Program-made: the position numbers and the translations under genes | Source of the DNA: Podarcis tiliguerta | Taxonomy: Eukaryota | Reading direction: 5' to 3' (one strand) | DNA length: 64,000 nucleotides | Assembly (NCBI GenBank): GCA_965153285.1 | Contig: OZ229117.1 | The notes under the pieces: model-generated | Told to the model about the DNA's origin: nothing | Database searches by the model: none | Seen by the model: the letters and a program-made list of their open reading frames with translations, nothing else | In this document: positions 12,041 through 59,025 of the stretch, in pieces | How positions within the stretch are numbered: position 1 is the stretch's first letter | How the letters are laid out: each line of letters starts with the position of its first letter

Positions 12041-12057
12041 CTACAACTGCTACTCAC

Positions 12058-27773: not shown

Positions 27774-27780
<7 letters not shown>

Positions 27781-27811
<31 letters not shown>

Positions 27812-27820
27812 TTTGTTTGT
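27781..27820. repeat. (GT)n then (GTTT)n microsatellite
   Basis: Direct reading. Confidence 0.95.
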
Positions 27821-38379: not shown

Positions 38380-38609
38380 GTAACATGCCTGGCTTCTGCC
38401 TGGGGCCCAGCTCTCACCAAAGAAGGGCAGGGACAGGATTCTGTGAGCTGGAGCTTCTTTTGCTGCTGCTGTACTTGGTGGGGAAGTTGTCGCAACACTC
38501 TGCAGAGCAGTGACCACTTTCCTTTCTAGAGAGGAGGCTAGTCTGCTTTTGTAACCCATGGAAAAGCTCACTTACTTTCTGCACCTCAGTTAGGAATGCC
38601 TAACCATCA

Positions 38610-38886
38610 AAATCACAAGAAGCAGTGATGGCCACCAACTTGGATGGCTTTAAAAGAGCATTAAACAAATTCATGGAGCAGTAGATTATCAGTTGCCTAC
38701 TAACCATGATGACTATATTCTGTCTCCGTTGCCAAAAGCAGCATGCCTCTAAAAGCCAGTTGTTGGGAATGATTTAGGTCCTGCTTGGGCTTCCAAGAGG
38801 CATCTGCTTTGGCCACTGTGAGAACAGGATGCTGCAGTAGAGATAGGTCTTTGGCCTGAACCAGCAGGCAGCTCTTACAGTCCTTT
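38610..38886 (+). mobile_element. CR1 LINE 3' fragment
   Basis: GGCCACCAACTTGGATGGCTTTAAAAGAG...AAATTCATGGAG ORF2 end and GGCCACTGTGAGAACAGGATGCTG...CCAGCAGGCAGCTCTTA tail; same family as the 14160 copy. Confidence 0.78.
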
Positions 38887-38909
38887 TTTTGCCCCCTTGT
38901 GCATTGCAG

Positions 38910-39115
38910 GAAATGGTGGAAGCTGCAGGGGAAGATGAGAGGGAACTAGCTGCAGAGATGGCAGCCGCGTTTCTGAACGAGAACCTTCCTGAGTCCATCT
39001 TTGGTGCTCCAAAAGCAGGAAATGGACAATGGGCGTCTGTTGTCCGGGTGATGAACCCCATCCAAGGAAACACATTAGATCTAGTCCAGCTGGAGCAAAA
39101 TGAAGCTGCCTTCAG
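38910..39115 (+). CDS. SF3B3: SF3B3 exon 19 (EMVEAAGEDERE...NEAAF)
   Basis: AG/GT, 206 nt. Confidence 0.97.
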
Positions 39116-39580
39116 GTAAGGAACAGTGTCTGCACCTCTGAAGCAAGTTACCATTTTGAATGCTGTCCTTTCTGCTAAATAATGAAAATTACTCTTAATA
39201 CCAGGTCATACTTTGGTCATACTTGAAGTACACCAGTCAAACCAAATATTTACTTATACTATTGTTGCCAGATGACTCTAGAATCTAATTAAATAAAGCA
39301 AAAATGCAGTCTACCTGAAGTTGTTTGGGGTCTTGGGGCCGATAGCAGTCATTTACCATGATCTTCTCAGCTGACAACGGCCCTAATTAAATCTCATTCA
39401 GTTTGTGCATTGCATTTGTATGCTGCCTTAGCACAAGCAAATGGTACAACATACTCTTCGCTGCTGCCATCCCCCAAAGTGAACTTTCTTGCTCTTAGTT
39501 GCTGTGAAGCAACTACTTCTTTTGCCTCCCCAGTCTTCCCTTGTCTTGTCAAGTAACATTATCGTTCTGGCTCTCTACAG

Positions 39581-39737
39581 TGTGGCAGTGTGCCGATTTG
39601 CCAATGGTGGTGACGACTGGCATGTTCTAGTGGGCGTAGCCAAGGACCTCATCCTCAACCCACGCTCTGTGGCTGGAGGCTTTGTCTACACCTATAAGTT
39701 GATAAACAGTGGGGAGAAGCTTGAGTTCCTGCACAAG
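39581..39737 (+). CDS. SF3B3: SF3B3 exon 20 (VAVCRFANGGDDW...LEFLHK)
   Basis: AG/GT, 157 nt. Confidence 0.97.
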
Positions 39738-40538
39738 GTGAGAATTTCCTCCACTAGTGGGTTGGAGGGGGAGGAATCTGGGAAGATGAACATGGATGGG
39801 GCTTGCCAAGAGGTTGCTAAAATGTACTGATGAGACCCGACTTTTTGGGACGGAAATCTCTTGGTTGGGAACAGAGGACCATCACTGTTAGTAAGTACTC
39901 CACAAATGGTTTTCCTTCTGTGCACAAAACAGCAGCCATATCAAAAATCACATTGGATTTTGCCTGTGTTTGCCATGCAAAATGTATGCATATTGCTTGC
40001 TGCCAGGGAAATTTGAGCAATTATAGTAGTGGTGTGACAGTTGCAGTTATCTAATGGACATTTGAAGCAAAACAAGCATAGACCTGTGAATGGGTCATTT
40101 ATAGGTGATCTGACTTGAGCATTTGCAGCACCTGATGGTGGTTGCTGAATACTTTGGCTTCTGTTGACATGGAGAAAGCCAACAATGTACAGAGCACTGC
40201 AAAAGTTGAATTCTTCCTCCTTGTTGATACCTAGCAGCCTGGACCTGTGTGGAGGCAGGTTCTTTTGTTGGGCAGGAACCGGACTAGGAGGCCCCTTCCT
40301 AGAGGCAGTTTGTCCTTGTGGGCTTGCAATGTCCATCTCTTCCCCAGTGGATGCAATGGGTACTTGATTCAAGTGGGCCCCAAAAGTCCGTGGTGGTGGA
40401 TCCGCATCCTTTGCCAGGGCTGAAACTTGCCTATCCCTGCAGTGGCGGGACATCATCTATGCAGTGAGGGTACTATTAATTATCTTTGTTTAGTCTGCTT
40501 GACAAAGGCTTCTTCTCTTTCATTTCCTTTCTGTTCAG

Positions 40539-40664
40539 ACCCCAGTAGAGGAGGTACCAGCTGCTATTGCCCCCTTCCAAGGCAGAGTGCTCATTGGTGT
40601 GGGGAAACTCTTGCGGGTATATGACTTGGGCAAGAAGAAGCTGCTCCGGAAGTGTGAGAATAAG
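40539..40664 (+). CDS. SF3B3: SF3B3 exon 21 (TPVEEVPAAIAPFQGR...RKCENK)
   Basis: AG/GT, 126 nt. Confidence 0.97.
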
Positions 40665-41498
40665 GTATTTAGAACGTTGTGTGTGTGTTTGTGTGTGCAG
40701 ATCTCCTGGAAGCTGCATTTCCTAATGCAGATACACCCTATTGCTTTTAACAAATTTGGTTGAAACCTTTGAACTTTTTTCAAGTTCCAGGGAAACATTC
40801 TCTTGCCCAGAGCTTTGGCTTCCTTCAGATTGCTTAAGGGGCAAGTCTTCAGGGCTGTTTCCACCCTCTCTGTACCTTTCTTTCCCTTGGGAATAGAATT
40901 GAGAATCTGAGGCTCAAAGGTGTGGTCTTGTGTTTATGAAGCTATGGCCTGTGATTCACACAAGGTGATAGTTGAAAGTTTTGGATTTTTTTTTAGTCAT
41001 TCCTGACACCAACTTTATAATGGTGTAGTGAACCGTCTGCACAAAAGGGCACAGAGCAGCCTGGACCCTCCAAATGTTTTGGACTACAACTCTCATCAGC
41101 TATTGTCAGCGTGGCCAATGGTCAAGGATGATGGGATTTGTAGTTCTGGCGGGTTCTGGGTTATAGAAAGTAGAAATAGGAACATTTTCATATTTCACAG
41201 ATTTGCTTTACCCTTGTTTGTTTGGCCTTCTGAGTATTTCTAGAATCAGGAGAGCTACCTAGAATGATGTTAGCACTGGTTCTCGGTGCACATTCAGATA
41301 TAGAAAGTGATCACAGATAAGCAATGTCCCAACTCTCCTTTTCTCTCTTAGAAAGCTACAGCATAGCCTTGCAGAGAGATGCCAGTGATATTCAGATTTC
41401 ATTTGCGTAGTGGCTCAGGAAGGGATTTTGGGGCTTGCCTTGAACAGCCTCCCTTTTCTGCTTTTTGAACGTTTTTCTGAATTGCTGTCACTTCCCAG

Positions 41499-41711
41499 CA
41501 CATTGCCAACTACATCTGTGGGATCCAGACCATTGGGCACCGAGTGATCGTCTCGGATGTCCAGGAGAGCTTCATCTGGGTGCGCTACAAGAGGAACGAG
41601 AACCAGCTGATCATTTTTGCAGATGACACCCACCCCCGCTGGGTCACCACTGCCTGCCTCCTCGACTATGACACAGTGGCTGGGGCTGACAAGTTTGGCA
41701 ACATCTGTGTG
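41499..41711 (+). CDS. SF3B3: SF3B3 exon 22 (HIANYICGIQTIGHR...FGNICV)
   Basis: AG/GT, 213 nt. Confidence 0.97.
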
Positions 41712-42381
41712 GTGAGTCAGCCTGAAGGCAGCCAGGAAACTCCTGGGGCTCATTTGAGAACTGTCCCGCTATTTTGATTCCCTGATGCAGGAGACGCCAG
41801 TGAAACCCCTGGCTTTTGCTTTTGCTAAGCACCATTTAGCTGGTGGCCTGTGAGACCTTTCTCCCACACTCACACGCTGCTGTCATGGGCGGTGGCAACT
41901 TCCTCTGGACTCTTCTGCCAAAGTGCACACCTTGTGACTGTTCTGTTAATGGAGACATATGCTTTGTTGCTCTTCTTTTGTGGCCTGGATTACACACCAC
42001 AGTCAGCCCACAGCTAAAAACAGGCTGCGGATTTATGTGGTTGTGTTGGTGCATGCTGCTGAAAAGTTCTTGCTCTGCTCCTCTCCTGCTGCTGCTGCTG
42101 CGACGGCTTGTTGTGACTTCCAGACCTCATCCTGTTGGTTTGTTTGCTTCCAACAAGCACAGGCAATGAGTCAAGAACAAACCTTGGCTAACTCTCATGG
42201 TTTATTGGGGGAGAAGCATGCTGTGAACCCAGGTTGGGGCACTCACTGTGGTTTGATGTGACATGCAGAGTGTTTGCTTGTTTGGGCTTTTCTGAATTCA
42301 TGCTTACAACACCTTCTAGTTATTCCCTTTTGCCACTGAGGCCACGCGTGAGTTTGATTCTCTTGATGCCTTCTCCTGTAG

Positions 42382-42480
42382 GTGCGGCTGCCGCCCAACA
42401 CAAATGATGAGGTAGATGAGGACCCAACTGGAAACAAGGCGTTGTGGGATAGAGGCCTTCTTAATGGGGCTTCTCAAAAG
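42382..42480 (+). CDS. SF3B3: SF3B3 exon 23 (VRLPPNTNDEVDEDPTG...NGASQK)
   Basis: AG/GT, 99 nt. Confidence 0.97.
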
Positions 42481-43590
42481 GTAACTTTGGTGTAGGGAAG
42501 GGGGTGCTTCCTCAGGTGAGAAACTGGAGGCTCTTTCTAGTTCTCTGGTTATTTATTAACTTCATTACCTGCCTTTTTCTGGAACCAGCAACTTCCTTTT
42601 AAAGAATATATAAATCTATGCATAAATCTACTGATAAAAAACATGTTACGGTGAATTGGTTTTTAAAAGCCAGAGTATCCGTATGGAATTAATAACATAT
42701 CTGTCTGCCGGTTGAAGCCTGAAAGGGGTTTTGAAATTAACTTCTGTGTCTACATAAATACAATGCGGAGCAGAGTTAAACCCCTGCATAGAGTGAAATT
42801 GTACTCCTGTGGTCAAGCAGGTGCCTTTGGAGCTTTGTAATTAGGGTTGTTTGTAGTTGTTGTTTTTCGTGCACAAAGGAATAGAGATTTTTTAAAAAGT
42901 TCACAGAAAAATGTCTTCCGTGTTCTTGAAATGCTGTAACATGATACAGGCAAAACTTTTGTGATTTCCCCCTACTCTGTTTTGAGAAGTTCCTGGGGAT
43001 AGGAGGGACAGTTTCCAATCGGGGAACATTGGACCCCTGTTAGTTAAATGAAACTTGAAACAGTATGGGGGAGAAACAACCCAGGACAACTGACCCCATG
43101 TAATTGTTGAGCCAGTATAGGGAGTATGAAGTGATTCAGGTTTGCTTAATTTTTTACTTTATTTGCAATGTCTTCTGAGGTTCATAGCACCCCTGTTACT
43201 GTAGGAGAGGTAACCCTCCTACACAATTTTATTTTTTACACTTAGCTAGCAGGAAGTAAATTTTAAGACATATTTCAACAGTCATCCTGTTTTAGGGGGG
43301 GATAATTTAATTGACACTGCATTTTAGAAATGTGAAATACAGTCTTAATGAAATACTGTGCTCATAATGGAAGGGGTCCAATGTACTCCAGTAGCCTAAT
43401 AGCACCTCCCTCCCCAAGCATTACACATAGGAAATCACTGTTCCAAGTTTGCATTATAAGTGTGTTTAGAAATATCCTCACCAACCACTGGAAGTGATAA
43501 ATGTAGGTTTTCTTTGATGAAAATGAGATTGTCTGGATTTAATGCATTATCCTAGGTCACCTGCTGAACTCTTGCTTGTCTTCCTTTCAG

Positions 43591-43734
43591 GCAGAGGTGA
43601 TTATGAACTACCATGTAGGGGAAACAGTCCTGTCCCTGCAGAAGACAACTCTAATCCCTGGAGGCTCTGAATCTCTTGTCTACACGACCTTATCTGGGGG
43701 CATTGGCATTCTGGTCCCATTTACGTCACATGAG
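43591..43734 (+). CDS. SF3B3: SF3B3 exon 24 (AEVIMNYHVGE...PFTSHE)
   Basis: AG/GT, 144 nt. Confidence 0.97.
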
Positions 43735-44369
43735 GTAGGAAGTTCTTGTATGATGGAAATATTAAGAGTTGTTCATCTACATAGTGCAGCAGGAGCACTT
43801 AATGCCCTGCAGTAGTGACAGTGAGTTATGGGAGGATGGAAGACAAAGTTGAAAGGGTGGGGAAGCTATGCCACTCCCTGCCCACAGTTGGCCTCTTGGC
43901 TCTTCCTTGTGTGGATGAGAAATGGATCTGCTTTAATGCAGTACTGAGCTTGGCTGCTCTTGGACCTCCTGAGCTGCCTATGGCTCTCTTTGCTCTCTGT
44001 ATGTCTCCCCCCCTCCCCAATGCATACACTGATACCTGGCAATAGAATGTACTCTAAAAACCTTTGCTAACACAGGTGACACCCACATTTGCCAGTTGGC
44101 TCTGCCCATGAGGCATGACCAAAATTTTATTGCATGACAGAATGAAGCAGAGCTAAAAAGGACTCACAGAAATTTTGGCATCTGGTTGCCCAAGGTACAA
44201 ATGGGCTGGGCTACTTGTTAGAAGCATTTGTCCAAGGAAAGGACTGGGTGACATATTTTACAGGAATATATGGCCCCTGCTCTGACTCACCCTCACAAGT
44301 TTACTATACTCAGTTATTATAACTGCCAGAATGGCCAGACATCACCCCCCCAATCAGATTAAGAGGCTA

Positions 44370-44748
44370 ATCGTAAGCCAACTAGCCAATAAAGCTCCAG
44401 GAGAAGACATGATCCCAGTGGAGATTTATAAGATAAGACCGGATTTCTGGCCACCCATTTTTGCAAAACTGTTTTCATATATTAACAGCTCAGGTTGCAT
44501 ACCGGAAGGGTGGAAGCTGAGTGTAATTGCCCCAATATGTAAAAATTGTGATTAGAAAAATCCTGCCATTTATAGACTCATTAGTTTGTTAGATGTAGCC
44601 TCTAAACTATATGCCAGGCTCCTTCTTGGGAGACTGGAAGAATGGGCAGATACAAATAAGGTGATATCTGAAGTCCAGGTAGGTTTCCAAAGAGGGAAAT
44701 CCATATTGGACCAGTGCTTTGTGATGAACTTTCTGCTATGTAAATACA
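44370..44748 (+). mobile_element. Degenerate LINE reverse transcriptase fragment (RTE/RTE-X-like)
   Basis: NKAPGEDMIP...IPEGWKLSVIAPI...YRLISLLDVASKLYA...QVGFQRGKSILDQ matches the N-terminal non-LTR RT motifs; contains an internal stop. Confidence 0.85.
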
Positions 44749-44801
44749 TCCTTCCCCAAAATGATGCATGCCAGCCTGCAGAGGGCTCACTCTCTCTAGG
44801 A

Positions 44802-45125
44802 CAGGGGTCAGCAACCTTTTTTTAGCTGTGGGCCGGTCCACCGTCCCTCAGACCATGTGGTGGGCGGGACTATATTTTGAAAAAAAAACCCTGAACCAAT
44901 TCCTATGCCCCACAAATAACCCAGAGAGGCATTTTAAATAAAAGCACACATTCTACTCATGTAAAAACACCAGGCAGGCCCCACAAATAACCCAGACATG
45001 CATTTTAAATAAAAGGAGACATTCTACTCATGTAAAAACACACTGATTCCTGGACTGTCTGCGGGCCGGATTGAGAAGACGATTGGTCCGCATCCAGCCC
45101 CTGGGACTTAGGTTGACTACCCCTG
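44802..45125. mobile_element. Non-autonomous hAT DNA transposon, 324 bp, with internal ~64-bp duplication
   Basis: TIRs CAGGGGTCAGCAACCT / AGGTTGACTACCCCTG; 8-bp TSD CTCTAGGA/CTCTAAGA; repeat units 44907-44970 and 44978-45041. Confidence 0.88.
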
Positions 45126-45273
45126 CTCTAAGAGGTTTGTTCAGGTGGCGTGTTGTCAACCAGTGTACCAATCACAGCCGCTCCTCTTTTCAATGCTGGC
45201 CCCGGGTGTGGCATGACACTGCTGCTTCCAGCTGTTTTCCTTTCCCTTTGATGGCGTTCTCTGCTCTTTTCAG

Positions 45274-45378
45274 GATCATGACTTCTTCCAACACGTTGAG
45301 ATGCATCTGAGGTCTGAACACCCTCCTCTCTGTGGACGAGACCACCTCAGCTTCCGCTCCTATTACTTCCCAGTGAAG
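45274..45378 (+). CDS. SF3B3: SF3B3 exon 25 ([15 protein letters not shown]...YYFPVK)
   Basis: AG/GT, 105 nt. Confidence 0.97.
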
Positions 45379-46326
45379 GTAGGCTGAGTTTGTGGGTCTC
45401 TGCTACGTGTCCATCATATGCTAATAAACACTTGAGCTCTGCTCATGGGTAAAAGTTGCCAATGTGAAGGCCAAATTTCCCCCTGCACTTTATGCTTTGG
45501 TCAGAGCATCTGCTGAGGTTGCTGGAATGGCTTTTCCAGGACAGGATTCTGCTTGCTAAGAAGGGTAATCAGCAATGGGGCCTATATGTCTACATGATTC
45601 TCTTTTTCTTTTTCACCATCTTGGTGGTTTGTCTGAATAGACGTTTATCTTTTCTAAGTGATAGGTATAGATTTCAAGCCCCCTCCCCGCAATTCCCTAT
45701 TGCAGTTCTCCCTGGTGATGGTAGCATCCCCTTAGAACTAACCTAGGTATCAAGGTGGGTCTTCTTTTTTCTTGGGAAACCATGTATTTCTCTTGGGTCA
45801 CCTGTACATCATGGATAGGGCAGCACTGTCCATGGTGTCAGAATTTGGTTTCTGCCCCCCCATATGAATCTGCATTTCAGGAAATGCTTCTGTGACAATG
45901 AGGAGTCATGTAGCAGGTTATTTCTGCATTAGAACTGTTAAGTCTTCATTTCTAGACTGCAACATTATCAGTGTAGCTCTAAACCTGCAAGTTCACCACA
46001 TGCCCTGGCGTGATCTTGAGCAAGACAGTTCGAGGTTTTTTTTGCTGGAGTTTGCTAGTTTTTTGTCCCTTCCCCCCCATTCCATGAACTTGTGGACACC
46101 CTCATTTTTCACTTTTTGGCAAATGTCTGCTGAACACCTGTACTTTTTTAAAGAGAGAATTTGCTTTTATTCATTCTGACGTTTGTGGAGAACCTTTGGG
46201 CCTCTTAGACAAGGCCTCTTGTTCTGTGTGCTTTGGGTCTGCTTTCTGTGCTTGAGCCCATTCCCTCCTTCGTTCCATGGGCTGCAGCTTCTAAAATAGC
46301 CCCCCACCCTTTTTTTCTCTTGCTAG

Positions 46327-46467
46327 AATGTCATTGATGGGGATCTGTGTGAGCAGTTCAACTCCATGGAGCCCAACAAGCAGAAGAACGTGTCTGAAGA
46401 GCTGGACAGGACCCCACCAGAGGTGTCCAAGAAGCTAGAGGACATCCGCACCCGCTATGCTTTCTGA
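46327..46467 (+). CDS. SF3B3: SF3B3 exon 26 coding part (NVIDGDLCEQF...IRTRYAF*)
   Basis: Acceptor tgctag, TGA at 46465-46467, 141 nt. Confidence 0.97.
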   Translation, partial: NVIDGDLCEQFNSMEPNKQKNVSEELDRTPPEVSKKLEDIRTRYAF

Positions 46468-47001
46468 GAGGCGCCTTTTCAGGGACGTGGCTGGGATTCC
46501 TGTTCCAAAGATGTTTTGAAGGGTATGAGCTTTTTTGGCCAGTTGCTCCCACTTTGGTACTCTTGTTTTCTTCCAGTGGCTTGAAAGTCCAACCATGTCA
46601 TCAACCTGTTCTGTCCATGCTGTTCCAGGAGTCAGTCAGGTTCTCCCAAGTGGCGAGGCCTCCCCTTTCAGGTGTGTTTCTGGCTCCACCCTTTTTACAG
46701 ACAGTTTGGGTGCTGCACCCACTACCGACCTGCCCTTGGACAAGGCCCTGGTGCCCTTTCCTTGTCAAGTGAGCTAGCTAGATGAAGTCCCCTTTTCTGA
46801 GTTGGTAAGATATGAGCACAGGGACGTTAGGGCGCCTCCTCTTCCATTGGCCAGTGTCTGGGAAGCCTTGTGGGCGTGGCTGGTGTAATTTTTCCATCCT
46901 GCAGTTTTTATTTCTGTGTTTGTAAATAGAGTCTTGTACCAAGTTAGCCTTTTGTCTGCTGAAGAGATGGCCTGTGTGAATCTGGCCATAGATTTTTCTT
47001 T

Positions 47002-47007
47002 AATAAA
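47002..47007 (+). terminator. SF3B3 polyadenylation signal AATAAA (ATTAAA also at 47021)
   Basis: First AATAAA after the stop, ~535 nt downstream, followed by GT/T-rich sequence. Confidence 0.75.
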
Positions 47008-48809
47008 ACCCAGCATCTGGATTAAAGGTTGGCTGACAAACCTGTTTGGTGACTTCTCTCATGAATTTTACCTGCTCCTGGGGACATGAGCTAGGGAGGA
47101 GCTCTGCCAATGGCACATTAAATTCATGGGAGGATCAATCTTGTCATTCATTTTAAAATGATGGACTTCTTACCCTTTGGGCTGCAGAGGAAAGCCACGT
47201 TTCCCTGCACTTGCAGTGTCCAGTATTAGGCTCTGTATTTCTCTAGAGATCTTACTCTCCATTTACTCTGCTGTGGAAGACTTGTTCAGCCCTCTCAGCT
47301 GTCCTAAGGAGGTTTATACTTAAGTTCTGGAATTGTCTCCCAACCTACCCTACCCCTTCAGAGAAGATAACATTGCTGTTATGTTTACTTTCCTCAAAAG
47401 CAAACCTTTTGCACTTCCTCCCTCCGAGCCATTCTTCGGGCTGCATTACATGTGAATGACAGATCTCTTTGTTTCTGTGGTGGGCTGACTACTTGTTTTA
47501 AATGTAATACAGGGGTTTGATTCATCCGAGTCAGCCTGGCCCAATAGTCAGGGATAATGGGAGCTGTAGCAAATATTTGGAGGGCACAGGTTCCTGAACT
47601 CTGGAGGACAGTGCAGGTGTCTATGGAACTTGTGACTGGCTGCAGCTCCTAAACACAGATACTTGCTTGAAGAGATACAAATGCCCTTCAGATATTATGG
47701 GGACCAGATGTTTAGTTCAAAATGTGCTGGCTGCTGAGAGACCAGTGTCTGGTTTTAATAGTTGTGAGCTCACCTTTAGTTGAGGTCCAGCTAGAAATAC
47801 AGTGGAACTGGCAGCACAGCCCCTTGGTGGAATGGGCACTTGCCGGATCAGGCTACAGAGAACAGTATTTTATTTAAGCCCAAAGCCAGGTGATTTCAGA
47901 TCTAGAATTGGGCCAGGCTTTCTGGGCCTCTTTCAAGACTTTCCTGGTGCTTCAGGTTGTTTTTGTTTCAAATGTCTTCGCTGAACAATTACTTTAAAGT
48001 GCTATTTCTCCTTCCATGTATGGATGTGGGAGTTCTGGATTGGATATCATCCATTTCAGAAGTAGAACTAAGCAAATTGTCTTGTCAGCTGAAAATCTCT
48101 ATATTTCGGCTTTGGGTAGGCGCTGACATGCTGTGTCAAACTGCCACACTGGACCTTCTCTGACTCCAAGAAAAGGAGAGCCCATCAGAAGGGAGCCAGT
48201 AGCCAGTGAGGGATTGCGGAAAAGGGAGCAATCTGTGTCTGGTTAGGAAGTCTCTTGCCCTCTTAGACAAGGCCAGAGTGGAGCAGTGTGTAGCCTTTGA
48301 GGACTGCTGCTGCCCAGCTGCCTCACTAAGGTTGGGGCTGGTGGAGAGGCCTAACACAGCCCAGCCTTGAAATGGTTCAGTGATTAGGGGTGGGGATTGA
48401 TGTGAAGGGCAACTGTCAGTGACAAAGACTGTGGTAAAGCTTGCTGTGGGGAAGAACTATCTTCTATGCTGCTATAGTGGAAGCTACAGAAATAATACCC
48501 CTCAGACTTCACCCCTGTTACTTCTCCACATACACAAGCAGGCACACTTGGATACTAAGCAGCTCTTTAGATTCTATGGGCATAGAAATGCTGGTTTCTT
48601 GATACAAGGTGCTGGAATTATGCAAATGGCTGTGAGAAGAGAGAGGGTTGGGGATTGATGCACTGGCTGGAACTGAAATCAGCAACGCCCAGCTCCTTTC
48701 TCCTAGTCCAGAGGCTGCGGCTTTAGAGCAACAGCATTAGAAAAAGAAAGGCCCCAGAAGGCTAAAAACAACAACAACACATGCTTATTGCTTTCCATTT
48801 GAGAAGATA

Positions 48810-48994
48810 CAGAGAGAGGCAGCTATTGATTGCTACCTCCACTGTTGGAGGCAGTGTGCTTCTGAATGCCAGTTGCTGGGAATCACACAAGGAGTTTCAA
48901 TTGTGCTTTGCCCTTTGAGTTTCCTACAGGCATCTATCTGGTTTGTCTCTGCCAGAGCGGGATGGGTCCTACAATCCAGCAGGCTCTTATGCTC
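48810..48994 (+). mobile_element. CR1 LINE 3' UTR fragment (intergenic)
   Basis: GGAGGCAGTGTGCTTCTGAATGCCAGTTGCTGGGAAT...CCAGCAGGCTCTTATG resembles the 38610 copy. Confidence 0.65.
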
Positions 48995-49307
48995 ATCTGA
49001 AATACACCTTAAGACATCTCTCTAAGAACCCCTACTAGGCTAGAACTATAGAAGCTGGTGCTTTGTTTTTAAAAAATACACTTACCTTTCCATTTCTGTA
49101 ACCATAAATTCAGAATTGGAATGGCTGGGACAAATGTGTGTTAGCATTTGTGTTGTGATTCCAGGAGGGTTACAGGTAGGAAAACCACCTGGAGATGTTG
49201 TGTGCCTGGCCTGAAGAAACAACTGCTTTGTTCCTCTTACGCGTAGGAGAGTAAGAATGGGTGGGATGGGGTGGGAGGAACCAATTTGCATTAATTACAG
49301 TACAACT

Positions 49308-49313
49308 TTTATT
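49308..49313 (-). terminator. Probable distal MTSS2 polyadenylation signal AATAAA (a proximal AATAAA lies at 51325-51320)
   Basis: Minus-strand AATAAA after U-rich UTR-like tracts containing TGTA motifs. Confidence 0.6.
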
Positions 49314-50384
49314 AATACTGGAATCTTCACAGTGCATTCGTTACTTGTAGCAGTGACTATTTTAAATGAAGGGAGAAGGGAAGGATAATTAACTTTAAGA
49401 ATGAAAGAGGGCGGGTGGGTAAGGCCAGGGCTGCTAGCAAAAGGGGGGTGGGGTAGGGAAAATAAATTAGAAAAAAAGAACAAGTTAACAGCACCAGAAT
49501 AGTTAACATCAGTTGAGAGAGACATTTTAAAGGGTTTTTTTCCTCTGTACAAAAAAAAAATAAAAATAAAAAGCAAAATGCAAACATTTCTCACGCATTG
49601 TCACTGTTGTCATTTCTGGCCATGACAGGGAGGAGGGGGGGCACCCACAGGAAGGTTGGTTGGTTAGAAACTAAACTGTTATTACTACGACAGTATAAGA
49701 GTTAAGGAGGCTACAACGTGACACCCACGCAAGCGCACATAAGACGTCTGGGCTGTGGGGAGGGTGGAGGGGACTGCTGTGGCTCTATGTACAACAACGA
49801 CAACACCAGGCCCTGCTGTGCCTTGCAGGGGCTAAGGATGGGGAGATGGGGGGGATCCAGCAAGAGGGAGCAGGCGCAGTTGTGCTTTCTCAGAGGCTTC
49901 TAGGCTCCCCAGCCCTTGCAAGGGGCCTTGAGTTGCCTGCTTTGGCCACCTCGTGTATTCACCACCACTGTGCTTTGCTCGTGCCTCACCACACAACACT
50001 CAATGCTGTCCACAGCTGTGCTCTCTCTCTACTTTAGAAAGGGTTGTTGACCACCATGCTGCTGCTATGAGAAACGTGGTGGCATCTCTCTTGGAATAAC
50101 TGTCACAAGCCCATCTTTCAATTTTTTCTTTGCATGGGTAAGCTCTGTACTCGAATGCCTGGCCAATCCAAAGACAAAGGAAGCCCCCTAATGTCTAGCA
50201 TGGGCTCTGCCTCCCCCACTTTAGCAACCCCATATGTGCTACATCTGTGCTGTTCAGTGATCCTTGGATACTCGACAGTCCCAGGACAGAAAAGCAAGAC
50301 ATGCTCATTCTTGAGCCCAACAAACACAAAAGGTGGAGGTTATGCAGCAGGGGCCATTTAATGGACCCTCATTTGTTGAGGAAG

Positions 50385-50510
50385 CTTGATCTGTAAAGCA
50401 TGAGACTCTTAACCCAGGACCAGGCCCCATGTTGGACAAGATTTCTGCATTGCAAAGGGTTGGACTAGGTGACCCTCATGGTTCCTTCCAACTCTACAAT
50501 TCTCCGATTC
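50385..50510 (+). mobile_element. Squam2-like SINE remnant with CR1-type tail
   Basis: GCATGAGACTCTTAA head remnant and GGGTTGGACTAG...CCTTCCAACTCTACAATTCT tail; related tails at ~28105-28210 (-), ~36835-36905 (-) and ~61190-61247 (+). Confidence 0.65.
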
Positions 50511-51639
50511 CTTCCTAGTCAAGCACAGAGAAAGGCCTCTCCCTCTTTCTCCCTCATCTTAGACCACCTTAATTCCCAGCCACTGACTTTCCCCATCACT
50601 TTCTCTTTCTTTCAAGACTGTCCCCTTTCCCAACATCACTTTCCATTTGCCAACACAGCCGATTTCTAGACTTTCTGGGACAATATCAGGGTGAGCACAA
50701 GGTAGATTCAAGTCTCTTGCACTCTCCAGATCTGGGTATAAGCAGTTGTTAAAACAGTTGCATTACATAACTAATATAAATAAACTTGAATGAATTTATC
50801 CAAACCCTTAACAAGTTGTTTCTGTGGGGCAGAATAGGCAGGTAAGTTCCAAATTTGGGGGGCAGGTGGAAGCAAGCAAAACAGCTTAAAAAGGTGATGG
50901 GCACAATTTGGATTCCTTCTGACTACCTGGCTTGCGTGCCCTAAGCTTCAGCCCTGCTGAACTCTTAACTCCCATCAGGCCCAGAAACCGGCCTAGCCCA
51001 TGGTCAGCATTGATGGGAGTCTTAATAACATTGGAAGGTGAAAAGTTCTCCATCCCTGGCCTAAAACAGTGAGAAATGTGGATATTCTTACAGCAGCTGC
51101 ATGGCCCAAGCTGGAGCTTCTAGCTGGGAGCTGCAATCCAACTCATGCTCCTTCAGCTCCAAGCACAGAGGAAGAAGCTGTGCTGAATATTCATCTGGTT
51201 ATAAATCTGGAGGCCAAAACCAGAACAAGGGAGCTGGCCTGTTTCTGTAAATCCCCTCTGCACCCATTTTTAAAGCCTGCTTGTGGCAATTCTTTCCTCA
51301 CTTTCTGCTGGGGCACTTTTTTATTATTAAATTACAGCAGTGGACTCTAATTTCAAGAGCAGGTCAGGGTGAATCGGGGAATCGTACCATGAATGGGATG
51401 TGCGGCAGCAACATCGCCAAAGGTAAACGAACCAATCAAGAGGGTTGGTTCAGCTATTTCCCTCTCTGCAGATATCTTTTTACCCCTTTCAAAGTATCCA
51501 CCCAATATTGACAAAATGGGCCCCCTTTTGATGCTGTTAGAAGAGGCACCCTGCCACACACTCACAGGTTTAGTCATAACCATACCCATACCTGGCCAAA
51601 ACAGGCTCACATTGGAAACAGCAGAGGACACTGCCCCAG

Positions 51640-51791
51640 ACCCAGTACTCCACCTAACTCAGCCTTGCCTAACACTGCTTGGCAGCAGCCTCCCACAACA
51701 AAGATCTTTCCTACTCTTATCTGGAGATGCCAACAGTTGAACCTGGGACCTTCTGCATGCCAAGCAGGTGCTCTACCACTCCGCTACAGCC
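51640..51791 (-). mobile_element. tRNA-derived SINE (Squam3-like) within MTSS2 3' UTR
   Basis: Minus strand reads GGCTGTAGCGGAGTGGTAGAGCACCTGCTTGGCATGCAGAAGGTCCCAGGTTCAA; similar to the 8653 copy. Confidence 0.75.
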
Positions 51792-52504
51792 TTTCCAGTG
51801 ACACCAGAACCTGAGAGCATCAGTTTGACAACCTTTGGCCTTGCCAGATGGTTGTAGCAGAATTCAAGAGCAGACACCCTCGGTCTTTGCACACACCCTG
51901 GTTCCAAAACCCTCTAAGGCCCTCAGTTACCAAAGTCCTCCACTAACATCCACAAAAAGGCTTCTTTTGCCCCTATATCCACTTTAGCTATTCCAGAGCA
52001 ACAGCTGTCCACCTTCACCTTTCCACCACTGCCAATTCTGTTCCCTCCCACCCACCTTCAAGGGAGAACCATGGCCACTGCTCTTACCAAAAGGTTCAAG
52101 CCCGGTCCTGAAGTGGCACTGAGGGCAGGTCAACAGCAGCCCAACCCTCGGCCTCTCAGATTACAGAGCTCCTACCCCACTTGGGACGAGAGCACAATCC
52201 TCTTCCTGAATATAACCAACCTGTCCATTCCTCTCCCAGTAGAGCCATGGAGGAAAGTGAGGCCGATAAGTCTGTGGCTGTGACTCAGCCTCTTGTTGGG
52301 GGGGATTGGGCCCTCCTGCCTGGTGACATGCCTGCAGGTTGTCCACTCCCTGCCCCTTGCACCCTCTCCTCCAGCTGCGCATTTGGGATCCACCAGGGAA
52401 CACGAGAGGCTTCCGGGATTGTTCACGGAGGTGTTAACTGCTGCTTGTAAAGTCCTTCTTGAAGTAGCTGATACAAACAGATGGCAAACAGAAAATAACT
52501 GGAA

Positions 52505-52505
<1 letters not shown>

Positions 52506-52534
<29 letters not shown>
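52506..52534. repeat. (AGAC)n tetranucleotide repeat in MTSS2 3' UTR
   Basis: Direct reading. Confidence 0.9.
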
Positions 52535-52535
<1 letters not shown>

Positions 52536-53089
52536 GAGCTGTGAAGGAAGGATTCAGCACAGGACTAACAGTGCATTTTTTGTCCGGAGGAGGTGGGTGC
52601 TCTCTAGGAATGGCAGCCTCCATTTCTTTGCCATGTGCTAGTGTGTCGGGGTGTGTGTGTGTGTAGTTTATACTAAGAACACTGTAGTTGCTAGATCCAG
52701 TTCAGGTTTTCACTCCTCCCTGACAATCATGGAGCAAGGGAATGGCCTCCCTCCTTGTGGCGGCAGCAGCAGCAACCGGTCTCTCTGCAGGCCAGGATGA
52801 AGGAAGGTGCAGGAGGGGAAAGGAAACCTGGGCAGGGCAGCAGATGGAAAAACAATGTGTATAAAAGAGGCTCCAAAACCAGTTCAGTGCCAGGCTGTGC
52901 CTGTGCAGGTTTGTTAGCAAAGGCATATAGATTAGTCTCCTTTATATCTAGACTCTGACACGATCTCCATAAAGTGGCTTTGCCTTTTGTGGTTCGTTTA
53001 CTTCTCTTCCATTTCCCCTGGTTTAGTCCTGACTCTGGTTGCTCTCCAGCCACAGGGTGGGCACTGAGCAGGCGCTGGGGAAGAGTCCA

Positions 53090-53853
53090 TCACAAAAACC
53101 GGGGCGCCGACCTGTCATTGGTGATGGTCCTGCGAAGGCGCACCCCACGCCGGATGGCCACCAGCATGTCTTCCGCCGGAGGGTCGCTGGAGGCTGCCGG
53201 GGGAGGAGTGGGTGTCTCTTCCCCGGGACCAAGGGCAGAGACCCCCGTGGGGAAGGGAAACTGGCCCTCGCCAAGGGCATGGGCACTGGCCACCAGCTCC
53301 CCAATCTTCTCCACCAGGCTGTGCCGGTTGGCTGCCAGCTGCTGCTCCTCCTCCTCGGTGGAGAGGTGCTTCCCGGCATACACAGAGATCTCCATCACGT
53401 TGCTGCCCCAGGCGGTGTTTGGCAGGCTCAGCCTCTTGGGTGAGGCTTTGGCGAAGTCCATGGCGCTTGGTGAGGCATCGTCAGTGTAGAACACACATTC
53501 CTCGCTGCCCACCCGGGTGGGGCCGGTGTACCCAGGGGAGTCAGGCACTGTTGGCGTCTTGACAGGGACGATGGGGGGTCTGATGGGAATGGGGCCGGCG
53601 TTGGAGAGGGTTCGGCGTACCGTGGGCTTGGTGGAAGGTGTGCGGCGGATGGTGGCCACCCCTGGCGTGGCGCCGGTGGGCAGGGCAGTGCCGGTGGGCA
53701 GGCCAGCAGTAGAAGCAGGCCGCTTGGTCTGGATCATGCGCCGGTAATTCTGGGCAATGTTGCTGTTGCGAGGGATAGTCGAGGATTTGTCGAATTCGCT
53801 CTGGCTCTCCCCTTCCATGTCACCGTTCACGGAGTAGCAGTCGTAATCTGAGC
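53090..53853 (-). CDS. MTSS2: MTSS2 last exon coding part (SDYDCYSVNGD...WH2...RSAPRFL*)
   Basis: ccacag acceptor, TGA at 53092-53090, 764 nt. Confidence 0.96.
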
Positions 53854-54191
53854 CTGTGGAGGCGACAGATGGACAGAGTAGGTGTCAGCATTCTCAGCTG
53901 GCAGGGGCAGCACAGCCAAGCAGCCACTGCTGCACCCCATGCACAACACTCTCCACTATATGAGATCTTTCATACGTATATATTTTGATTCCGTTAATAT
54001 ATATAACTTGTGCCTATTTTAGTTGTAAGCTGCCTTGAATCCCATTGGGGGGGGGGAAGGCAAGATATAAATAAATATAATAACCATGTATACCACCCTA
54101 AAAATATTTATCGTTAAACTGGGCAACCACATTAAGTAAAACGCCACCCCACCCCTTCCCAGGGTGCCAAGCAGCCCATTGGCAAAGATAC

Positions 54192-54357
54192 CTTGCGAGG
54201 GGATGGTGTCCTCAGAGCAGGAAGGAGTGGTGGTTTGTGTGCTGTAGCCACTGGAGTACTGCAGGGAGTCCCGGCTACTCTTCTGGTGCTCAAGACTCAG
54301 GCCTCGGGTCAGCACCATGGCCAGGTCACTTGCGGCTGGGGACACTTCCTCCCCATG
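54192..54357 (-). CDS. MTSS2: MTSS2 exon (HGEEVSPAASDLAMVLTRGLSLEHQKSSRDSLQYSSGYS...IPSQ)
   Basis: AG/GT, 166 nt. Confidence 0.95.
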
Positions 54358-55347
54358 CTGATGGAGAAACAAAATGGGGTGGGGTGAGGAGTGAGAGGTG
54401 TGATGAGCTGGTCTCAAAGCAAATGGCACCCTGAGCTGTAGGAGATGATACCATGTGTGTGCCAGGCCACCTGCACCCAAAGGTCAGAAAACATTAATGG
54501 AAAGCAAGTGGAGATGGGGAGATAGGAGAATGAGCAAGTCATCTCATTCCCCAAAACTATGTTGGCCGTGAACACAACACCCCTAGTGGGCAAGCAGCTG
54601 GTGCCATGAGGGTGGTTAGCCTGGATCTCTCCCAGGCTAACATGCGTGCCCCAATTCCACATGCACCCCATGAGCCCCTCATCATTGCAGCTCTGCTCAA
54701 GACAGGATGTGCAAAGAATTCCCATTTCTTTTGTGTGCACTGGGGGGGGGGGGCTGAAGGGAGGGGGCTTTGTGGGGCAGAGGCAAGGTGGAAATAGGAG
54801 GAGGAAAGTGGTGCCTAAAGGCAGTGGCCAGCCCTCCCTCCCTCCCATGGCTATTCCCCAGTGACTCACATACAGCAGCTGGTGAGAGTAGGCATCATGT
54901 CTGCCAGGGTCACTCAAGCAGGTCCCTCACCAAACATATGAAGTATAAGCAACAGACATGCATCATTCAATTCCTCCAGGGCTCCACAGCCCCATCAGGG
55001 CAAAGGGCTACACAGGAAGCTGCTGGCATGCGATGGCATGCTGGGGGTGGCAATTTTTCACAATTCATATCAGCAAAACCCATCAACTGCAAAACAATTC
55101 TCCGAGAGAACTTCCTCTGCTGCCCTGAAATTCCCTTCTGCACTCAGCTCAAGGATGCCATTTGCTATTTGGGTAAATCTCCTTCTGGAAGAAGACATGC
55201 AGAGGCGGCCCGGGTCTTCTCCTCCAGGGAGTTGCCTCTCTGCTAGCTAAGGTTTGGGACAAGTAAGGGTTCCATCACCTGGGTACCAAACCTATTCCAA
55301 GTTCCTGTCCCCCCAGTCTCCCATTTTGACACTGAAGCTGGCTATAC

Positions 55348-55524
55348 CTTGGCAGCAATGGAGGCCGGGGACATGCGGGGCCTGGAGCCTTCCTCCAAGC
55401 TGATTCCTGGGTATACCAGGCTGGTGGAGCCCAGCTCAGCTTCACGGAGATGCTCTACGCGGTCCTTCCTTCGCTGCAGTGTGCTTGCCACCGGCTGTTC
55501 ATAGAGGCTAGCCTTGGACCAATC
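55348..55524 (-). CDS. MTSS2: MTSS2 exon (DWSKASLYEQPVASTLQRRKDRV...SPASIAAK)
   Basis: AG/GT, 177 nt. Confidence 0.94.
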
Positions 55525-57330
55525 CTGCAAAATCCAAGAGGAGATGGGTAGGACGGCACAGCTGGGGCCCCAACATCAGGCACAGCAGTGCAAAGTCAGG
55601 TGGGTATGGAATAGGGCAGAAATGGGAGATGAGACTGGATGGAGAGGGATTGGGCAAGGGGGTGGGGAGAGAGGAATTGGCAAAAGGGCCACCCCAGGGC
55701 AAAGAGCAGGGGTTGTGGCAATCACAAAATGGCTCTGCCACCATTTTGCTCTGTTGGGCTGGGGACGGAGAAATCCCCTCTTGGCTTAAAAAGGGTTTCA
55801 ACAAAGACAGGAAAGGTGGAGGCACCAGGCCAGGAGGGTGCCCGCTTCCTTTTAAAAGTGTGGGTTGCTTGAAGCAGCTGACAGTCATGATACCTCCAAC
55901 AATATGTGTCCCCCATCCCACTGGAATCCCAATTCTCTCACTCTCCTCAAACACATTTTCTGGAAAAAGTCAGGTGGATGCATCTTCCCTCTTACAGAAA
56001 GTGCTATATAAATACTGAGTGTTCAAAACACAGCACATTCAGTTCTGCACGATCCATACAGTGGTCCTGAAAGGCAGACTGCTGTCTAAAAGCACTCAGT
56101 GAGCTCATGGCTGATCTGAGAATGGAAGGACTTCCAGGCAGGGGCTGTTCTCAGCCCCCCCCCCCACTTCACTCCACTCACACCAAACCCTACATGGTGT
56201 TTGTTTATGGGAAGCAGTTCCTGCCCCAACTCAGAGATGGCAGCACAGGGACATTGCAGAGACTTTGGGGGGGAGGGCAGATGGGTCAGCTGAGGGGAAA
56301 TAGTTCATATTCTGCCATCCCAAAGCTGTCCTGATGCAGGCTTCCTGTGTTCAGGAAGAAGGAAGCAGCACTTCCTGTTTCCAGAGCACTTTGATGTGCT
56401 CACAATGCCAGTGTGCAAGAGGAAAGAACAACTGCTTCAGACAGCCTGATGGGTTTGATCTGGGGCCACATGGGAGCCTTTCCTACCTGCACCTAAAAAT
56501 GCTGGGGTGGGAGCCTGGCTGGGTTCAACCAATGAGCATATTAAATGATGCAGAAAAAACCCCAAAACAGAACGGAACTTGTGCAGAGCAGAGGCTCTTG
56601 CTCCTGAGTGACCTCTGCAGCATCACCTCCATTGCTTTCCAGAGGGGAATCCCTAGGCTGCTGCTGGAAGATTAGGCTTGGAGCTACATGTTTCCGGAGC
56701 CAACAGAGCCACAGAAGGCTCCTGTTCCAGCTCTGGAGCAGCTGACTCCCCTGGTCAAGATCTCGGAAACGGACACACCACAATATACACACCAGGCTAA
56801 GGCTTCTTCTGGAGCTTCCTTCAGTCCTGGCCACATGAGCTACATTCAGGGGTTTCCACTGAAACACAGTAAGAAACCACGGTGAAGAGAACCCAGAGCA
56901 CACGCATGACCGCTGCACACCCAGCCAACCTGCAGGGGGTGGGAAGGGGGCGGCCCGTGGCAACCGGCTGGGCAGAGCTGCAGAGGAAGCCAGAATCACA
57001 CCGGAATCATCAAGCCAGGACCAAAAAAACAACAACCATCAAAAAGCCAAGAGCCAAAAGCCAGCCAACAAGGTGGGACCGGGAACAGAAATGGTGGAGG
57101 AAGAAGAGGAGAGGGAGACGGCAACCAGAGGAGCAGGAGGAGGTGTCCATTTCCCCCAAGGTTTGTGACATGCTAAAGCCCTGCAGTGCATCAGCCACTG
57201 GGTGGGGTGCGTATCCCTGGATCCTGGGTGTGTGATGGGTGGGTTGGTGGGTGGGTGGGAAGGATGTTGCCGATTTGCGCGTCACCTTCCGGCCGCCTGA
57301 CCATGCCCCGGGGGCAGAGCTAGAACTGAC

Positions 57331-57405
57331 CGAGGTCGGGGAGTTGCATTCGCTAACAGACTGGCAGGTTTCTGAGGCCTCGGACGATGCGGAGCTGGAG
57401 GACTT
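57331..57405 (-). CDS. MTSS2: MTSS2 exon (KSSSSASSEASETCQSVSECNSPTS); alternative donor extends it to 57286
   Basis: Acceptor ggcag; donor gtcagt (75 nt) or gtgacg (120 nt), both in frame. Confidence 0.85.
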
Positions 57406-57506
57406 CTGCCATGCCCAAAGTCCAAAGGTCAGCAGGAGCAAAACAGACATATGGGAGAGAAGGGAGAGAAGAGACCTGGTTAAGCAGCTGGTGGAGGGAA
57501 AGCAGC

Positions 57507-57510
<4 letters not shown>

Positions 57511-57554
<44 letters not shown>
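57511..57554. repeat. (GA)n microsatellite; a (TC)n tract on the MTSS2 sense strand
   Basis: Direct reading. Confidence 0.95.
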
Positions 57555-57557
<3 letters not shown>

Positions 57558-59025
57558 CGAGGAGGCAGATGCAAGCGCAGGGCAGCCAGCCTTGACACTC
57601 AAGAGCCAGGTGTTAGATCACAGCAGGCAGTGCAAGCACCGGAGGAGCCACACACGCTCACGGGAAGCCCATGAGGGGCCTCACATGGATTTTGCACAGG
57701 CACTTCCAGGCCCTCTGCAATAACTCTTCAGCAGGGGAAGCGATGAGGAAGGAGCTGGGAGGAAGGAAGGCCGCCTTCCTCTGCAAGGGCAAGAGGAAAG
57801 GGCCAGCTGCAGGAAGCAGAGAGGCAGGAGGGGAAAGCCTCCTCTCGCCCAGGGTGTGGAAACAAGGCACACAGGAGGCCAGAGGGGCGTCCCAAACTTC
57901 CTGCACCTTCCTCACAGGTGCACACTCGGCAGCTGCCCTCTTCCTGCCCGCAGGCCAGCCATTCTGCTTGCACCTCCATGAGACACTTTACAAAAACACA
58001 ACATTATTCATAAATATCTTAACTTGCTTCTCTTGGAGCCGCCCTCGGCTCAGGGCAGCTTGATAAACCTTCGCTCTGCAAGTCTTGGATAAAATCCCTC
58101 TGGACCATCTGTTGCAGAAGCCCCAGAGAAAGAGCTGCTGGCTCTTTACACTTAAAAGAAATGGGGACGTGAGAACCTTTGAGTGGCTGTAACCCTCCAT
58201 GGCTGTGGGATTCAGAAATCCATGCTTTAGTGCCGCCTTCACAGGCCTGGAGCCCTCCAGATGTTCTGGGCTCTTAATTCGCACTGGAACGGCCACACTG
58301 GGGCAGGCATCTTAATAGGCAGCAGGCTGGCAAAAGCTACTTGAGTGGGTGGGGGGCTTGTTACATTCCCTGCAGCACTAAGCCCCTTCCCCAGTCACAG
58401 AGAAGCCATTATGTGCACCTGGCTATTCAGCTGGAGGGATGAGAGAGATTTTTTTTCCCTTCAAGGGAAGCTCCGAGCTGCAGGTCCCCCAAATCTGAAG
58501 CCTTGACACCTATGTAGGAGTTCTTCATCACCCCTGGAGAGCTGAGGCTGTCAGTTCCTAGGGCTCAACAACCACCGGGTGGCCAAGGAGAGAAGCAGGC
58601 TTCTTTTCCTCACAGATTTCTGGGCCTACTCCCTTCCCAGGCGAAAAAGAGACGTGGCTGCCAACACCTCACCTGGAGCCAGCTAAAATGGGGACTGGCA
58701 CACCCATCCGTTGCACAGCCCATATAGTGCTGGGAACTTACCCCATCTAAATAGTCAGCCAGCCTGGTTTATAAAAAGGAAGGACTGAGGGCAGAGGAAT
58801 CTGATTAAACTGGAGGGGTGGGGGATGGCAGCTCATTCAAGGGGTCTGTCACCTGTCCTATGGCCACCAGCACCCTTGACTTCCGCTAAGAGGCTGTGCA
58901 TGCACAACCAGATTGGGCTTGCCTGCAGCAGAGTAACAGCAAGAAGAGTGTTGATAGTTGCCATGTTTGCCCAGGGCTTCCCCTTTACATTCTGTGGCCT
59001 TTGGCGGCTGCCCCGCAGAGCTTAC

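What the first reader, a model, noticed from the sequence alone, without database searches (positions are those of the whole stretch)
47010..49300. IL34 is not recognisable at its conserved position between SF3B3 and MTSS2
Seen: only ~2.3 kb separates the inferred SF3B3 polyA signal (47002) from the MTSS2 one (49308). The gap has no CpG island, no assembly gap and no recognisable coding exons, and part of it is CR1/MITE debris. Known: human order is COG4-SF3B3-IL34-MTSS2-VAC14, and I recall the same for chicken; IL34 is the second CSF1R ligand, supporting Langerhans cells and microglia. Inference: IL34 was deleted or relocated in this lizard lineage. If deleted, CSF1 alone (or a substitute) would maintain skin and brain macrophages. 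I cannot say whether this loss has already been reported.
Basis: partly seen in the sequence, partly recalled or inferred. Interest (0 to 1): 0.78.

Follow-up and report, generated by a model that had tools for sequence, protein, structure and literature searches.

The report
Known IL34 gene loss in lizards
The short stretch between the SF3B3 and MTSS2 genes really does lack the immune signalling gene IL34, but this loss in lizards and snakes has already been published, so the finding is correct and not new.

Summary
SF3B3 (+) ends with stop codon TGA at 46465-46467 and has AATAAA at 47002. MTSS2 (-) ends with its stop at 53090-53092 and has AATAAA (minus strand) at 49308. The two hexamers are 2,300 bp apart and the two stop codons 6,622 bp apart. 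The window has no N. The gap has 46% GC and CpG o/e 0.12. Its open frames are no longer than chance gives. None of 204 stop-free six-frame pieces covering 46950-53100 matched an IL34 family in Pfam. Short-read contigs from four runs (four studies, four organism labels) tile 46500-50000 colinearly, with indels of 8 bases or fewer, so nothing is hidden by a collapsed assembly. COG4 / SF3B3 / MTSS2 synteny was verified exon by exon.

The interpretation (deletion of IL34) is supported, but it is already in print. Pinheiro et al., eLife 2020, report IL34 lost in Squamata. Salve et al., BMC Biol 2026, describe a segmental deletion between SF3B3 and MTSS2 in 261 squamate assemblies, with long-read validation, read searches and relaxed selection on CSF1R. 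Novelty: already known. Interest: low.

The parts
1..14850 (-). COG4 (partial; runs off the window start). It is the left-hand synteny anchor, divergent from SF3B3 across a GC-rich promoter region at about 14-16 kb.
   Evidence: Stop-free pieces 2706-2948, 4735-5004, 8095-8559 and 9343-9708 hit Pfam COG4_m (E 1e-7 to 7e-20), and 10497-10757 hits COG4_N (E 3.5e-16). GC is 0.53-0.56 at 14-16 kb. The first-exon end at about 14850 was read by eye.
16000..47025 (+). SF3B3. The last coding exon is 46327-46464, the stop TGA is at 46465-46467, and the 3' UTR runs to AATAAA at 47002-47007. The start coordinate is approximate.
   Evidence: Pieces 41544-41777 and 43576-43815 hit Pfam CPSF_A (E 4e-21 and 3e-10). 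SNORD111 lies at 18772-18854 (+) (Rfam 46.8 bits). Contig depth in X15 falls from 206 to 48 at about 47066 (the RNA nature of that run is a guess).
47010..49300 (.). Tail-to-tail intergenic gap where IL34 lies in other vertebrates. There is no gene, no CpG island and no assembly gap.
   Evidence: It is tiled colinearly by contigs of 4 runs: X5 record 25 covers 46500-48857, X3 record 20 covers 47411-49266, X1 record 7 covers 48858-49402 and X5 record 32 covers 48859-49445.
47436..47669 (.). Moderately repeated snippet inside the gap, of undetermined class.
   Evidence: Summed contig depth is 197-314 against a baseline of 12-18 in X1 and X5.
48833..48887 (.). About 55 bp fragment of a very high-copy dispersed repeat, of undetermined class. 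It is the only place where most contigs break.
   Evidence: Depth is 4,743 (X1) and 4,049 (X5) against a baseline of 12-18. Many unrelated contigs match just 48833-48887, and loose ends lie on both sides.
49290..53092 (-). Inferred MTSS2 3' UTR, from the stop at 53090-53092 to the minus-strand AATAAA at 49308-49313. Its true end is not shown.
   Evidence: 0 of 114 six-frame pieces of 49300-53100 hit an IL34 family.
53090..64000 (-). MTSS2 coding exons (partial; runs off the window end). It is the right-hand synteny anchor.
   Evidence: 53090-53830 hits WH2 (E 7e-6). Its best named relative is 'MTSS1-like protein, partial [Gekko japonicus]' at 92% identity. 62129-62374 and 60968-61213 hit IMD (E 4e-20 and 1e-6).

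Best explanation
The interval is the scar of an old segmental deletion that removed the whole IL34 gene from between SF3B3 and MTSS2. The published work places this event on the squamate stem, after the split from tuatara. SF3B3 and MTSS2 now end tail to tail about 2.3 kb apart. What lies between them is ordinary CpG-depleted non-coding DNA with two short fragments of dispersed repeats.

Shown here: absence of any IL34-like coding piece at the locus, intact flanking synteny, and a sound local assembly. Taken from the literature, not tested here: absence of IL34 from the rest of squamate genomes and reads, the timing of the loss, and relaxed selection on CSF1R. Inferred: CSF1, the other CSF1R ligand, alone sustains CSF1R-dependent macrophage lineages in these animals.
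For: COG4(-) / SF3B3(+) / MTSS2(-) were verified exon by exon with Pfam, Rfam and a named MTSS2 relative. The gap is 2,300 bp between polyA hexamers and 6,622 bp between stop codons. 0 of 204 stop-free pieces across 46950-53100 hit an IL34 family at E<=10, whereas exon-sized pieces of the flanking genes were picked up at E 1e-6 to 1e-21 by the same method. ORF lengths are at chance level. There is no N and no CpG island. Contigs of 4 runs from 4 studies and 4 organism labels are colinear, and all 12 listed indels are <=8 nt (6 more not shown). Divergence of organism E in the gap (20 of 731 and 25 of 597 letters) is about the same as or higher than in the SF3B3 3' UTR (13 of 567), so nothing there looks constrained. 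Literature: PMC7717901 and PMC13005343.
Against: No IL34 sequence could be obtained from any tool. The Pfam scan therefore has no positive control on a real IL34 exon, and that Pfam-A holds an IL34 model is my recollection, not a call result. IL34 diverges fast: identity is 44-48% between sauropsids and human. Only 46950-53100 of the window was scanned for it. X1 may be the sample the window was assembled from and is not independent. All runs laid were contigs, not raw or long reads. The published genome-wide searches used BLASTn, plus DIAMOND on annotated proteins ('tblastn' occurs 0 times in the main text). The authors themselves concede that highly diverged forms could escape such searches.
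Confidence: 0.93

Rival explanations
1. IL34 still exists in this genome but has moved to another chromosome region, or has diverged so far that nucleotide searches and annotation pipelines miss it.
For: The published genome-wide searches were BLASTn with human, chicken and other outgroup queries, plus OrthoFinder/DIAMOND on annotated proteins. 'tblastn' is absent from the main text, and the authors concede that diverged forms may escape. IL34 is only 44-48% identical between sauropsids and human. I could not run any genome-wide search.
Against: No hit was found in 261 squamate assemblies, raw DNA reads or RNA-seq. The SF3B3-MTSS2 distance is significantly contracted across squamates, which fits deletion in place. 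CSF1R shows relaxed selection in several squamates. Nothing IL34-like lies in 46950-53100 here.
Confidence: 0.04
2. The assembly is collapsed or mis-joined here, and IL34 sits in sequence missing from the window.
For: Contigs break at 48833-48887, a high-copy repeat with many loose ends. Only contigs were available, not long reads.
Against: X3 record 20 (1,850 nt) runs through that repeat from 47411 to 49266. X5 record 25 covers 46500-48857 in one piece. X1 record 7 and X5 record 32 reach past 49400. Neighbouring pieces overlap by about 30 nt, and all 12 listed indels are <=8 nt (6 more not shown), in 4 runs of 4 studies. There is no N in the window. Long reads span the same locus in Podarcis muralis and Naja naja (PMC13005343, Fig. 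6 legend).
Confidence: 0.01
3. Decayed IL34 exons (a pseudogene) remain in the gap, so the gene was lost by decay and not by deletion.
For: A deletion cannot be told from very old decay by absence alone. The boundaries cannot be delimited because the nearest outgroup diverged about 250 My ago.
Against: 0 of 90 pieces in the gap hit an IL34 family. The gap is 2.3 kb, and the paper reports a significantly contracted SF3B3-MTSS2 distance across squamates. Open frames are at chance level.
Confidence: 0.02

Closest known systems
IL34 loss by segmental deletion in Squamata (Salve, Sonal & Vijay, BMC Biol 2026, PMC13005343; first noted by Pinheiro et al., eLife 2020, PMC7717901)
   Same: Same flanks (COG4, SF3B3 | MTSS2), same contracted SF3B3-MTSS2 interval, same absence of remnants, and the same conclusion about CSF1R and CSF1. 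The paper's Fig. 6 shows the SF3B3-MTSS2 junction of a wall lizard inside a 5-kb view, which matches the scale seen here.
   Different: Nothing of substance. This report adds a protein-profile scan of the interval and of the MTSS2 3' UTR. It also adds colinear short-read contigs from four coded runs for this particular genome and its close relatives. Whether this species is among the 261 assemblies could not be checked: supplements are closed and the organism is coded.
IL34 absence in the Australian ghost shark with FUK-COG4-SF3B3-MTSS1L-VAC14 kept together (Pinheiro et al. 2020, passage read)
   Same: IL34 is missing from an otherwise intact synteny block.
   Different: This is an independent event in a cartilaginous fish. 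No sequence was compared here.
'Hidden' GC-rich genes of birds that were assembly dropouts (Hron et al. 2015, cited in PMC13005343; known to me only from that citation)
   Same: A conserved gene that appears to be missing from annotation.
   Different: Here the locus is fully assembled, has 46% GC and no gap, and is confirmed by independent contigs, so it is a true absence at the locus and not a dropout.

Membership tests
IL34 gene (four-helix CSF1R ligand; Pfam IL34 family, whose existence in the library is recalled) | Coding exons matching the IL34 domain profile | tested here: not met
   0 of 90 pieces (46950-49360) and 0 of 114 pieces (49300-53100) hit at E<=10. No positive control on a real IL34 was possible.
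IL34 gene (four-helix CSF1R ligand; Pfam IL34 family, whose existence in the library is recalled) | A gene on the SF3B3 strand between SF3B3 and MTSS2, with promoter and open frames | tested here: not met
   CpG o/e is 0.117 with no island. The longest stop-free piece is 106 aa, which is chance level. Only 2,300 bp are available.
Squamate IL34 segmental-deletion locus (PMC13005343) | Flanking synteny COG4-SF3B3 | MTSS2 conserved | tested here: met
   COG4_m and COG4_N, CPSF_A, SNORD111, IMD and WH2 hits lie in the expected order and on the expected strands. The MTSS2 exon is 92% identical to the Gekko japonicus MTSS1-like protein.
Squamate IL34 segmental-deletion locus (PMC13005343) | SF3B3-MTSS2 distance contracted relative to non-squamates | tested here: inconclusive
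   The distance here is 2,300 bp (signals) or 6,622 bp (stops). The comparison rests on the paper.
Squamate IL34 segmental-deletion locus (PMC13005343) | Assembly at the locus validated by independent reads | tested here: met
   Contigs of X1, X3, X5 and X15 tile 46500-50000 colinearly. These are contigs only, and X1 may be the source sample.
Squamate IL34 segmental-deletion locus (PMC13005343) | No IL34 elsewhere in the genome or transcriptome | not testable with these tools
Notes of this scan hold nothing under 'IL34', 'CSF1R' or 'interleukin'.
Squamate IL34 segmental-deletion locus (PMC13005343) | Organism is a squamate | tested here: inconclusive
Runs and organisms are coded. The best named MTSS2 relative is a gecko at 92%, ahead of a penguin at 88%.

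The most novel reading that the evidence does not exclude
Squamates keep a second CSF1R ligand after all. It would be either an IL34 so diverged or relocated that BLASTn, DIAMOND orthogrouping and annotation all miss it, or an unrelated structural substitute. If so, the published 'natural IL34 knockout' would be an artefact of search sensitivity. A lesser variant: the 'empty' gap is transcribed. A run guessed to be RNA covers 47037-48768 at a quarter to half the depth of the SF3B3 3' UTR, which could be a long SF3B3 3' UTR isoform or a convergent read-through overlapping MTSS2.
Probability: 0.05. Interest if true: 0.55.

Novelty: already known. Interest (0 to 1): 0.1.

Why it matters
IL34 is one of the two ligands of CSF1R. 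In mice it is needed for Langerhans cells and for part of the microglia; this is established knowledge that I recall, not taken from a call. A whole vertebrate order without IL34 is a natural experiment on ligand redundancy, and that is why the published papers studied it. This window confirms the published picture for one more genome at base-pair resolution and opens no new question.

Tried and rejected

2. As a result there is no IL34 query. I made no search of the protein databases for squamate IL34-like proteins, ran no positive control of the Pfam scan, and folded no structure.

3. The search of earlier findings by the words 'IL34', 'CSF1R' and 'interleukin' found nothing. By place it returned two notes on other matters, an SF3B3 poison exon and an MTSS2 microexon, neither of which was used.

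4. blastn of the gap against the rest of the window, to classify the repeats, gave 0 hits. A self-comparison gave none either.

5. Rfam on the whole window returned only SNORD111 in an SF3B3 intron and nothing in the gap.

6. I considered a Pfam scan of the whole window and dropped it. 824 pieces of >=40 aa lie outside 46950-53100, which would need about 12 more calls for a remote possibility.

7. A CR1 origin for part of the gap is not supported at protein level.

8. Supplements of PMC13005343 (Tables S1, S4, S5, S7, S8, S12) were not opened because they are closed. They may list the species examined, the tuatara IL34 status and the read sets.

Full report
**What is at the coordinates**

The window carries three genes in the order and orientation expected for the vertebrate IL34 neighbourhood.

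- COG4 lies on the minus strand from the window start to about 14.8 kb. Four stop-free pieces hit Pfam COG4_m and one hits COG4_N (E 1e-7 to 7e-20).
- SF3B3 lies on the plus strand. Two pieces hit CPSF_A (E 4e-21 and 3e-10). SNORD111 sits in an early intron at 18772-18854. The last coding exon is 46327-46464, followed by TGA at 46465-46467.
- MTSS2 lies on the minus strand. Two pieces hit the IMD domain. The last coding exon, 53090-53830, carries a WH2 motif. It is 92% identical to 'MTSS1-like protein, partial [Gekko japonicus]', the best named hit among the 120 listed of 292 proteins found.
- I searched these genes exon by exon and never joined exons.

**The gap**

- AATAAA stands at 47002 on the plus strand, and AATAAA on the minus strand at 49308.
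- The two hexamers are 2,300 bp apart and the two stop codons 6,622 bp apart.
- The window has no N. The interval has GC 0.46 and CpG o/e 0.117, with 14 CpG.
- Its longest stop-free piece is 106 aa. 500 first-order Markov simulations give a mean maximum of 112 (sd 25), and 53% of them reach the observed value.
- One caveat: other minus-strand polyA hexamers lie at 51320 and 50357, and inside the gap at 47869 and 47754. The true 3' end of MTSS2 is not shown.

**Is anything IL34-like there?**

- I cut every stop-free six-frame piece of >=20 aa from 46950-49360 (90 pieces) and every piece of >=22 aa from 49300-53100 (114 pieces).
- I scanned each piece against Pfam-A at E<=10.
- 0 of 90 and 0 of 114 matched an IL34 family. 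Each scan gave eight unrelated single-member families, with best E-values 6.5e-4 and 5.1e-3. That is what about 100 searches give by chance.
- The same procedure recognises exon-sized pieces of the neighbouring genes at E 1e-6 to 1e-21.
- Two limits apply. I had no real IL34 exon as a positive control, and that Pfam-A holds an IL34 model is my recollection.

**Is the assembly sound?**

- 20 of the 24 listed public runs hold part of 46800-49500, and 14 hold at least half of its sampled words. They come from nine studies and several coded organisms.
- I laid the contigs of four runs on 46500-50000: X1, X3, X5 and X15, from four studies and organism labels A, B, C and E.
- X5 record 25 covers 46500-48857 in one contig.
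- X3 record 17 covers 46500-47409, and X3 record 20 covers 47411-49266.
- X1 record 7 covers 48858-49402, and X5 record 32 covers 48859-49445.
- Neighbouring pieces overlap by about 30 nt. All 12 listed insertions and deletions are <=8 nt; 6 more were not shown.
- Two single-contig joints (skips of 65 and 86 nt near 48370-48470) have sides under 30 nt and are not reliable.
- Most contigs break only at 48833-48887. Summed depth there is 4,743 (X1) and 4,049 (X5) against a baseline of 12-18, and many unrelated contigs match just those 55 bases, so it is a fragment of a very abundant dispersed repeat. X3 record 20 runs straight through it.
- A second, moderately repeated stretch lies at 47436-47669, with depth 197-314.
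- X1 matches the window almost perfectly. It may be the source sample and is not independent. The other three runs are.
- These are contigs, not long reads, and they show presence, not depth. Still, no room is left for a hidden gene.

**Repeats**

- No reverse-transcriptase or transposase family was hit.
- The gap has no blastn match elsewhere in the window.
- The repeat class stays open.

**Constraint**

- In organism E the gap differs at 20 of 731 and 25 of 597 letters (records 10 and 11). The SF3B3 3' UTR differs at 13 of 567 (record 9).
- The gap is no better conserved than the neighbouring UTR. This is a weak test, and it gives no hint of a hidden functional element.

**What is known**

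- A full-text search for 'IL34' plus 'squamate' found three papers and listed two. 'IL-34' plus 'squamates' plus 'CSF1R' found one.
[quoted passage not shown] They give the human order FUK, COG4, SF3B3, IL34, MTSS1L, VAC14.
- Salve, Sonal and Vijay, BMC Biol 2026 (PMC13005343; outline, sections 7, 8 and 16, and passages read), analysed 261 squamate assemblies. Their main results on IL34:
  - They confirm the absence of IL34.
  - COG4 and SF3B3 lie on one side of the locus and MTSS2 and VAC14 on the other.
  - The SF3B3-MTSS2 distance is significantly contracted in squamates.
  - PacBio and Nanopore reads span the junction in Podarcis muralis (a 5-kb view) and Naja naja.
  - BLASTn of assemblies, raw reads and RNA-seq found no IL34.
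  - CSF1R shows relaxed selection in several squamates.
  - They call IL34 'the strongest empirical case' among 53 genes.
The paper's main text never mentions tblastn. Its protein-level step is OrthoFinder/DIAMOND on annotated proteomes.
- The authors note that highly diverged forms could escape such searches, and that deletion boundaries cannot be delimited because tuatara diverged about 250 My ago.
- Whether tuatara IL34 specifically is intact, and which species were examined, is in supplements that I could not open.

**What I could not do**

I could not fetch the gecko locus or a non-squamate locus.
- I had no IL34 sequence from any tool.
- There is therefore no database-wide search for a squamate IL34-like protein, no positive control, and no test of relocation.
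- The scan's own notes on this genome hold nothing under IL34, CSF1R or interleukin.
- The organism is coded.

**Verdict**

The mechanism is an old segmental deletion that left SF3B3 and MTSS2 tail to tail, with CSF1 presumably the sole remaining CSF1R ligand. It is already known (2020, 2026), so interest is low. The only residual opening is the small chance that a very diverged or relocated ligand has escaped nucleotide-level searches.

Noticed in passing
window 46500-48768 (run X15): A run guessed to be RNA, from a close relative (organism E), has contig depth 206 over the SF3B3 3' UTR up to 47066. Depth is then 48-103 over 47037-48768 and nil over 48957-49775. If it is truly RNA, read-through or a long 3' UTR isoform of SF3B3, or an intergenic transcript, crosses most of the 'empty' gap.
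   Followed up: no
window 47754, 47869, 50357, 51320 (minus strand): Further minus-strand polyA hexamers lie inside the gap (AATAAA at 47869, ATTAAA at 47754) and inside the supposed MTSS2 3' UTR (AATAAA at 51320, ATTAAA at 50357). The MTSS2 3' end inferred at 49308 is one of several possibilities.
   Followed up: partly
window 18772-18854 (+): SNORD111 box C/D snoRNA (Rfam RF00611, 46.8 bits against a gathering score of 46) lies in an early SF3B3 intron. It was the only Rfam match in the window.
   Followed up: no
window 44286-44822 (+): Two adjacent stop-free pieces (89 aa each) in a late SF3B3 intron look by eye like a LINE reverse-transcriptase remnant. The first gave no Pfam hit at E<=0.01 and the second was not scanned, so this is unverified.
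   Followed up: partly
window 48833-48887: A snippet of about 55 bp is present at about 250-300 times single-copy depth in two runs, with many different flanks. It is a fragment of a very abundant dispersed repeat of this genome group, of undetermined class.
   Followed up: partly
window 14000-16500: A GC-rich stretch (GC 0.53-0.56) lies between the first COG4 exon (minus) and the start of SF3B3 (plus). It looks like a shared bidirectional promoter.
   Followed up: no
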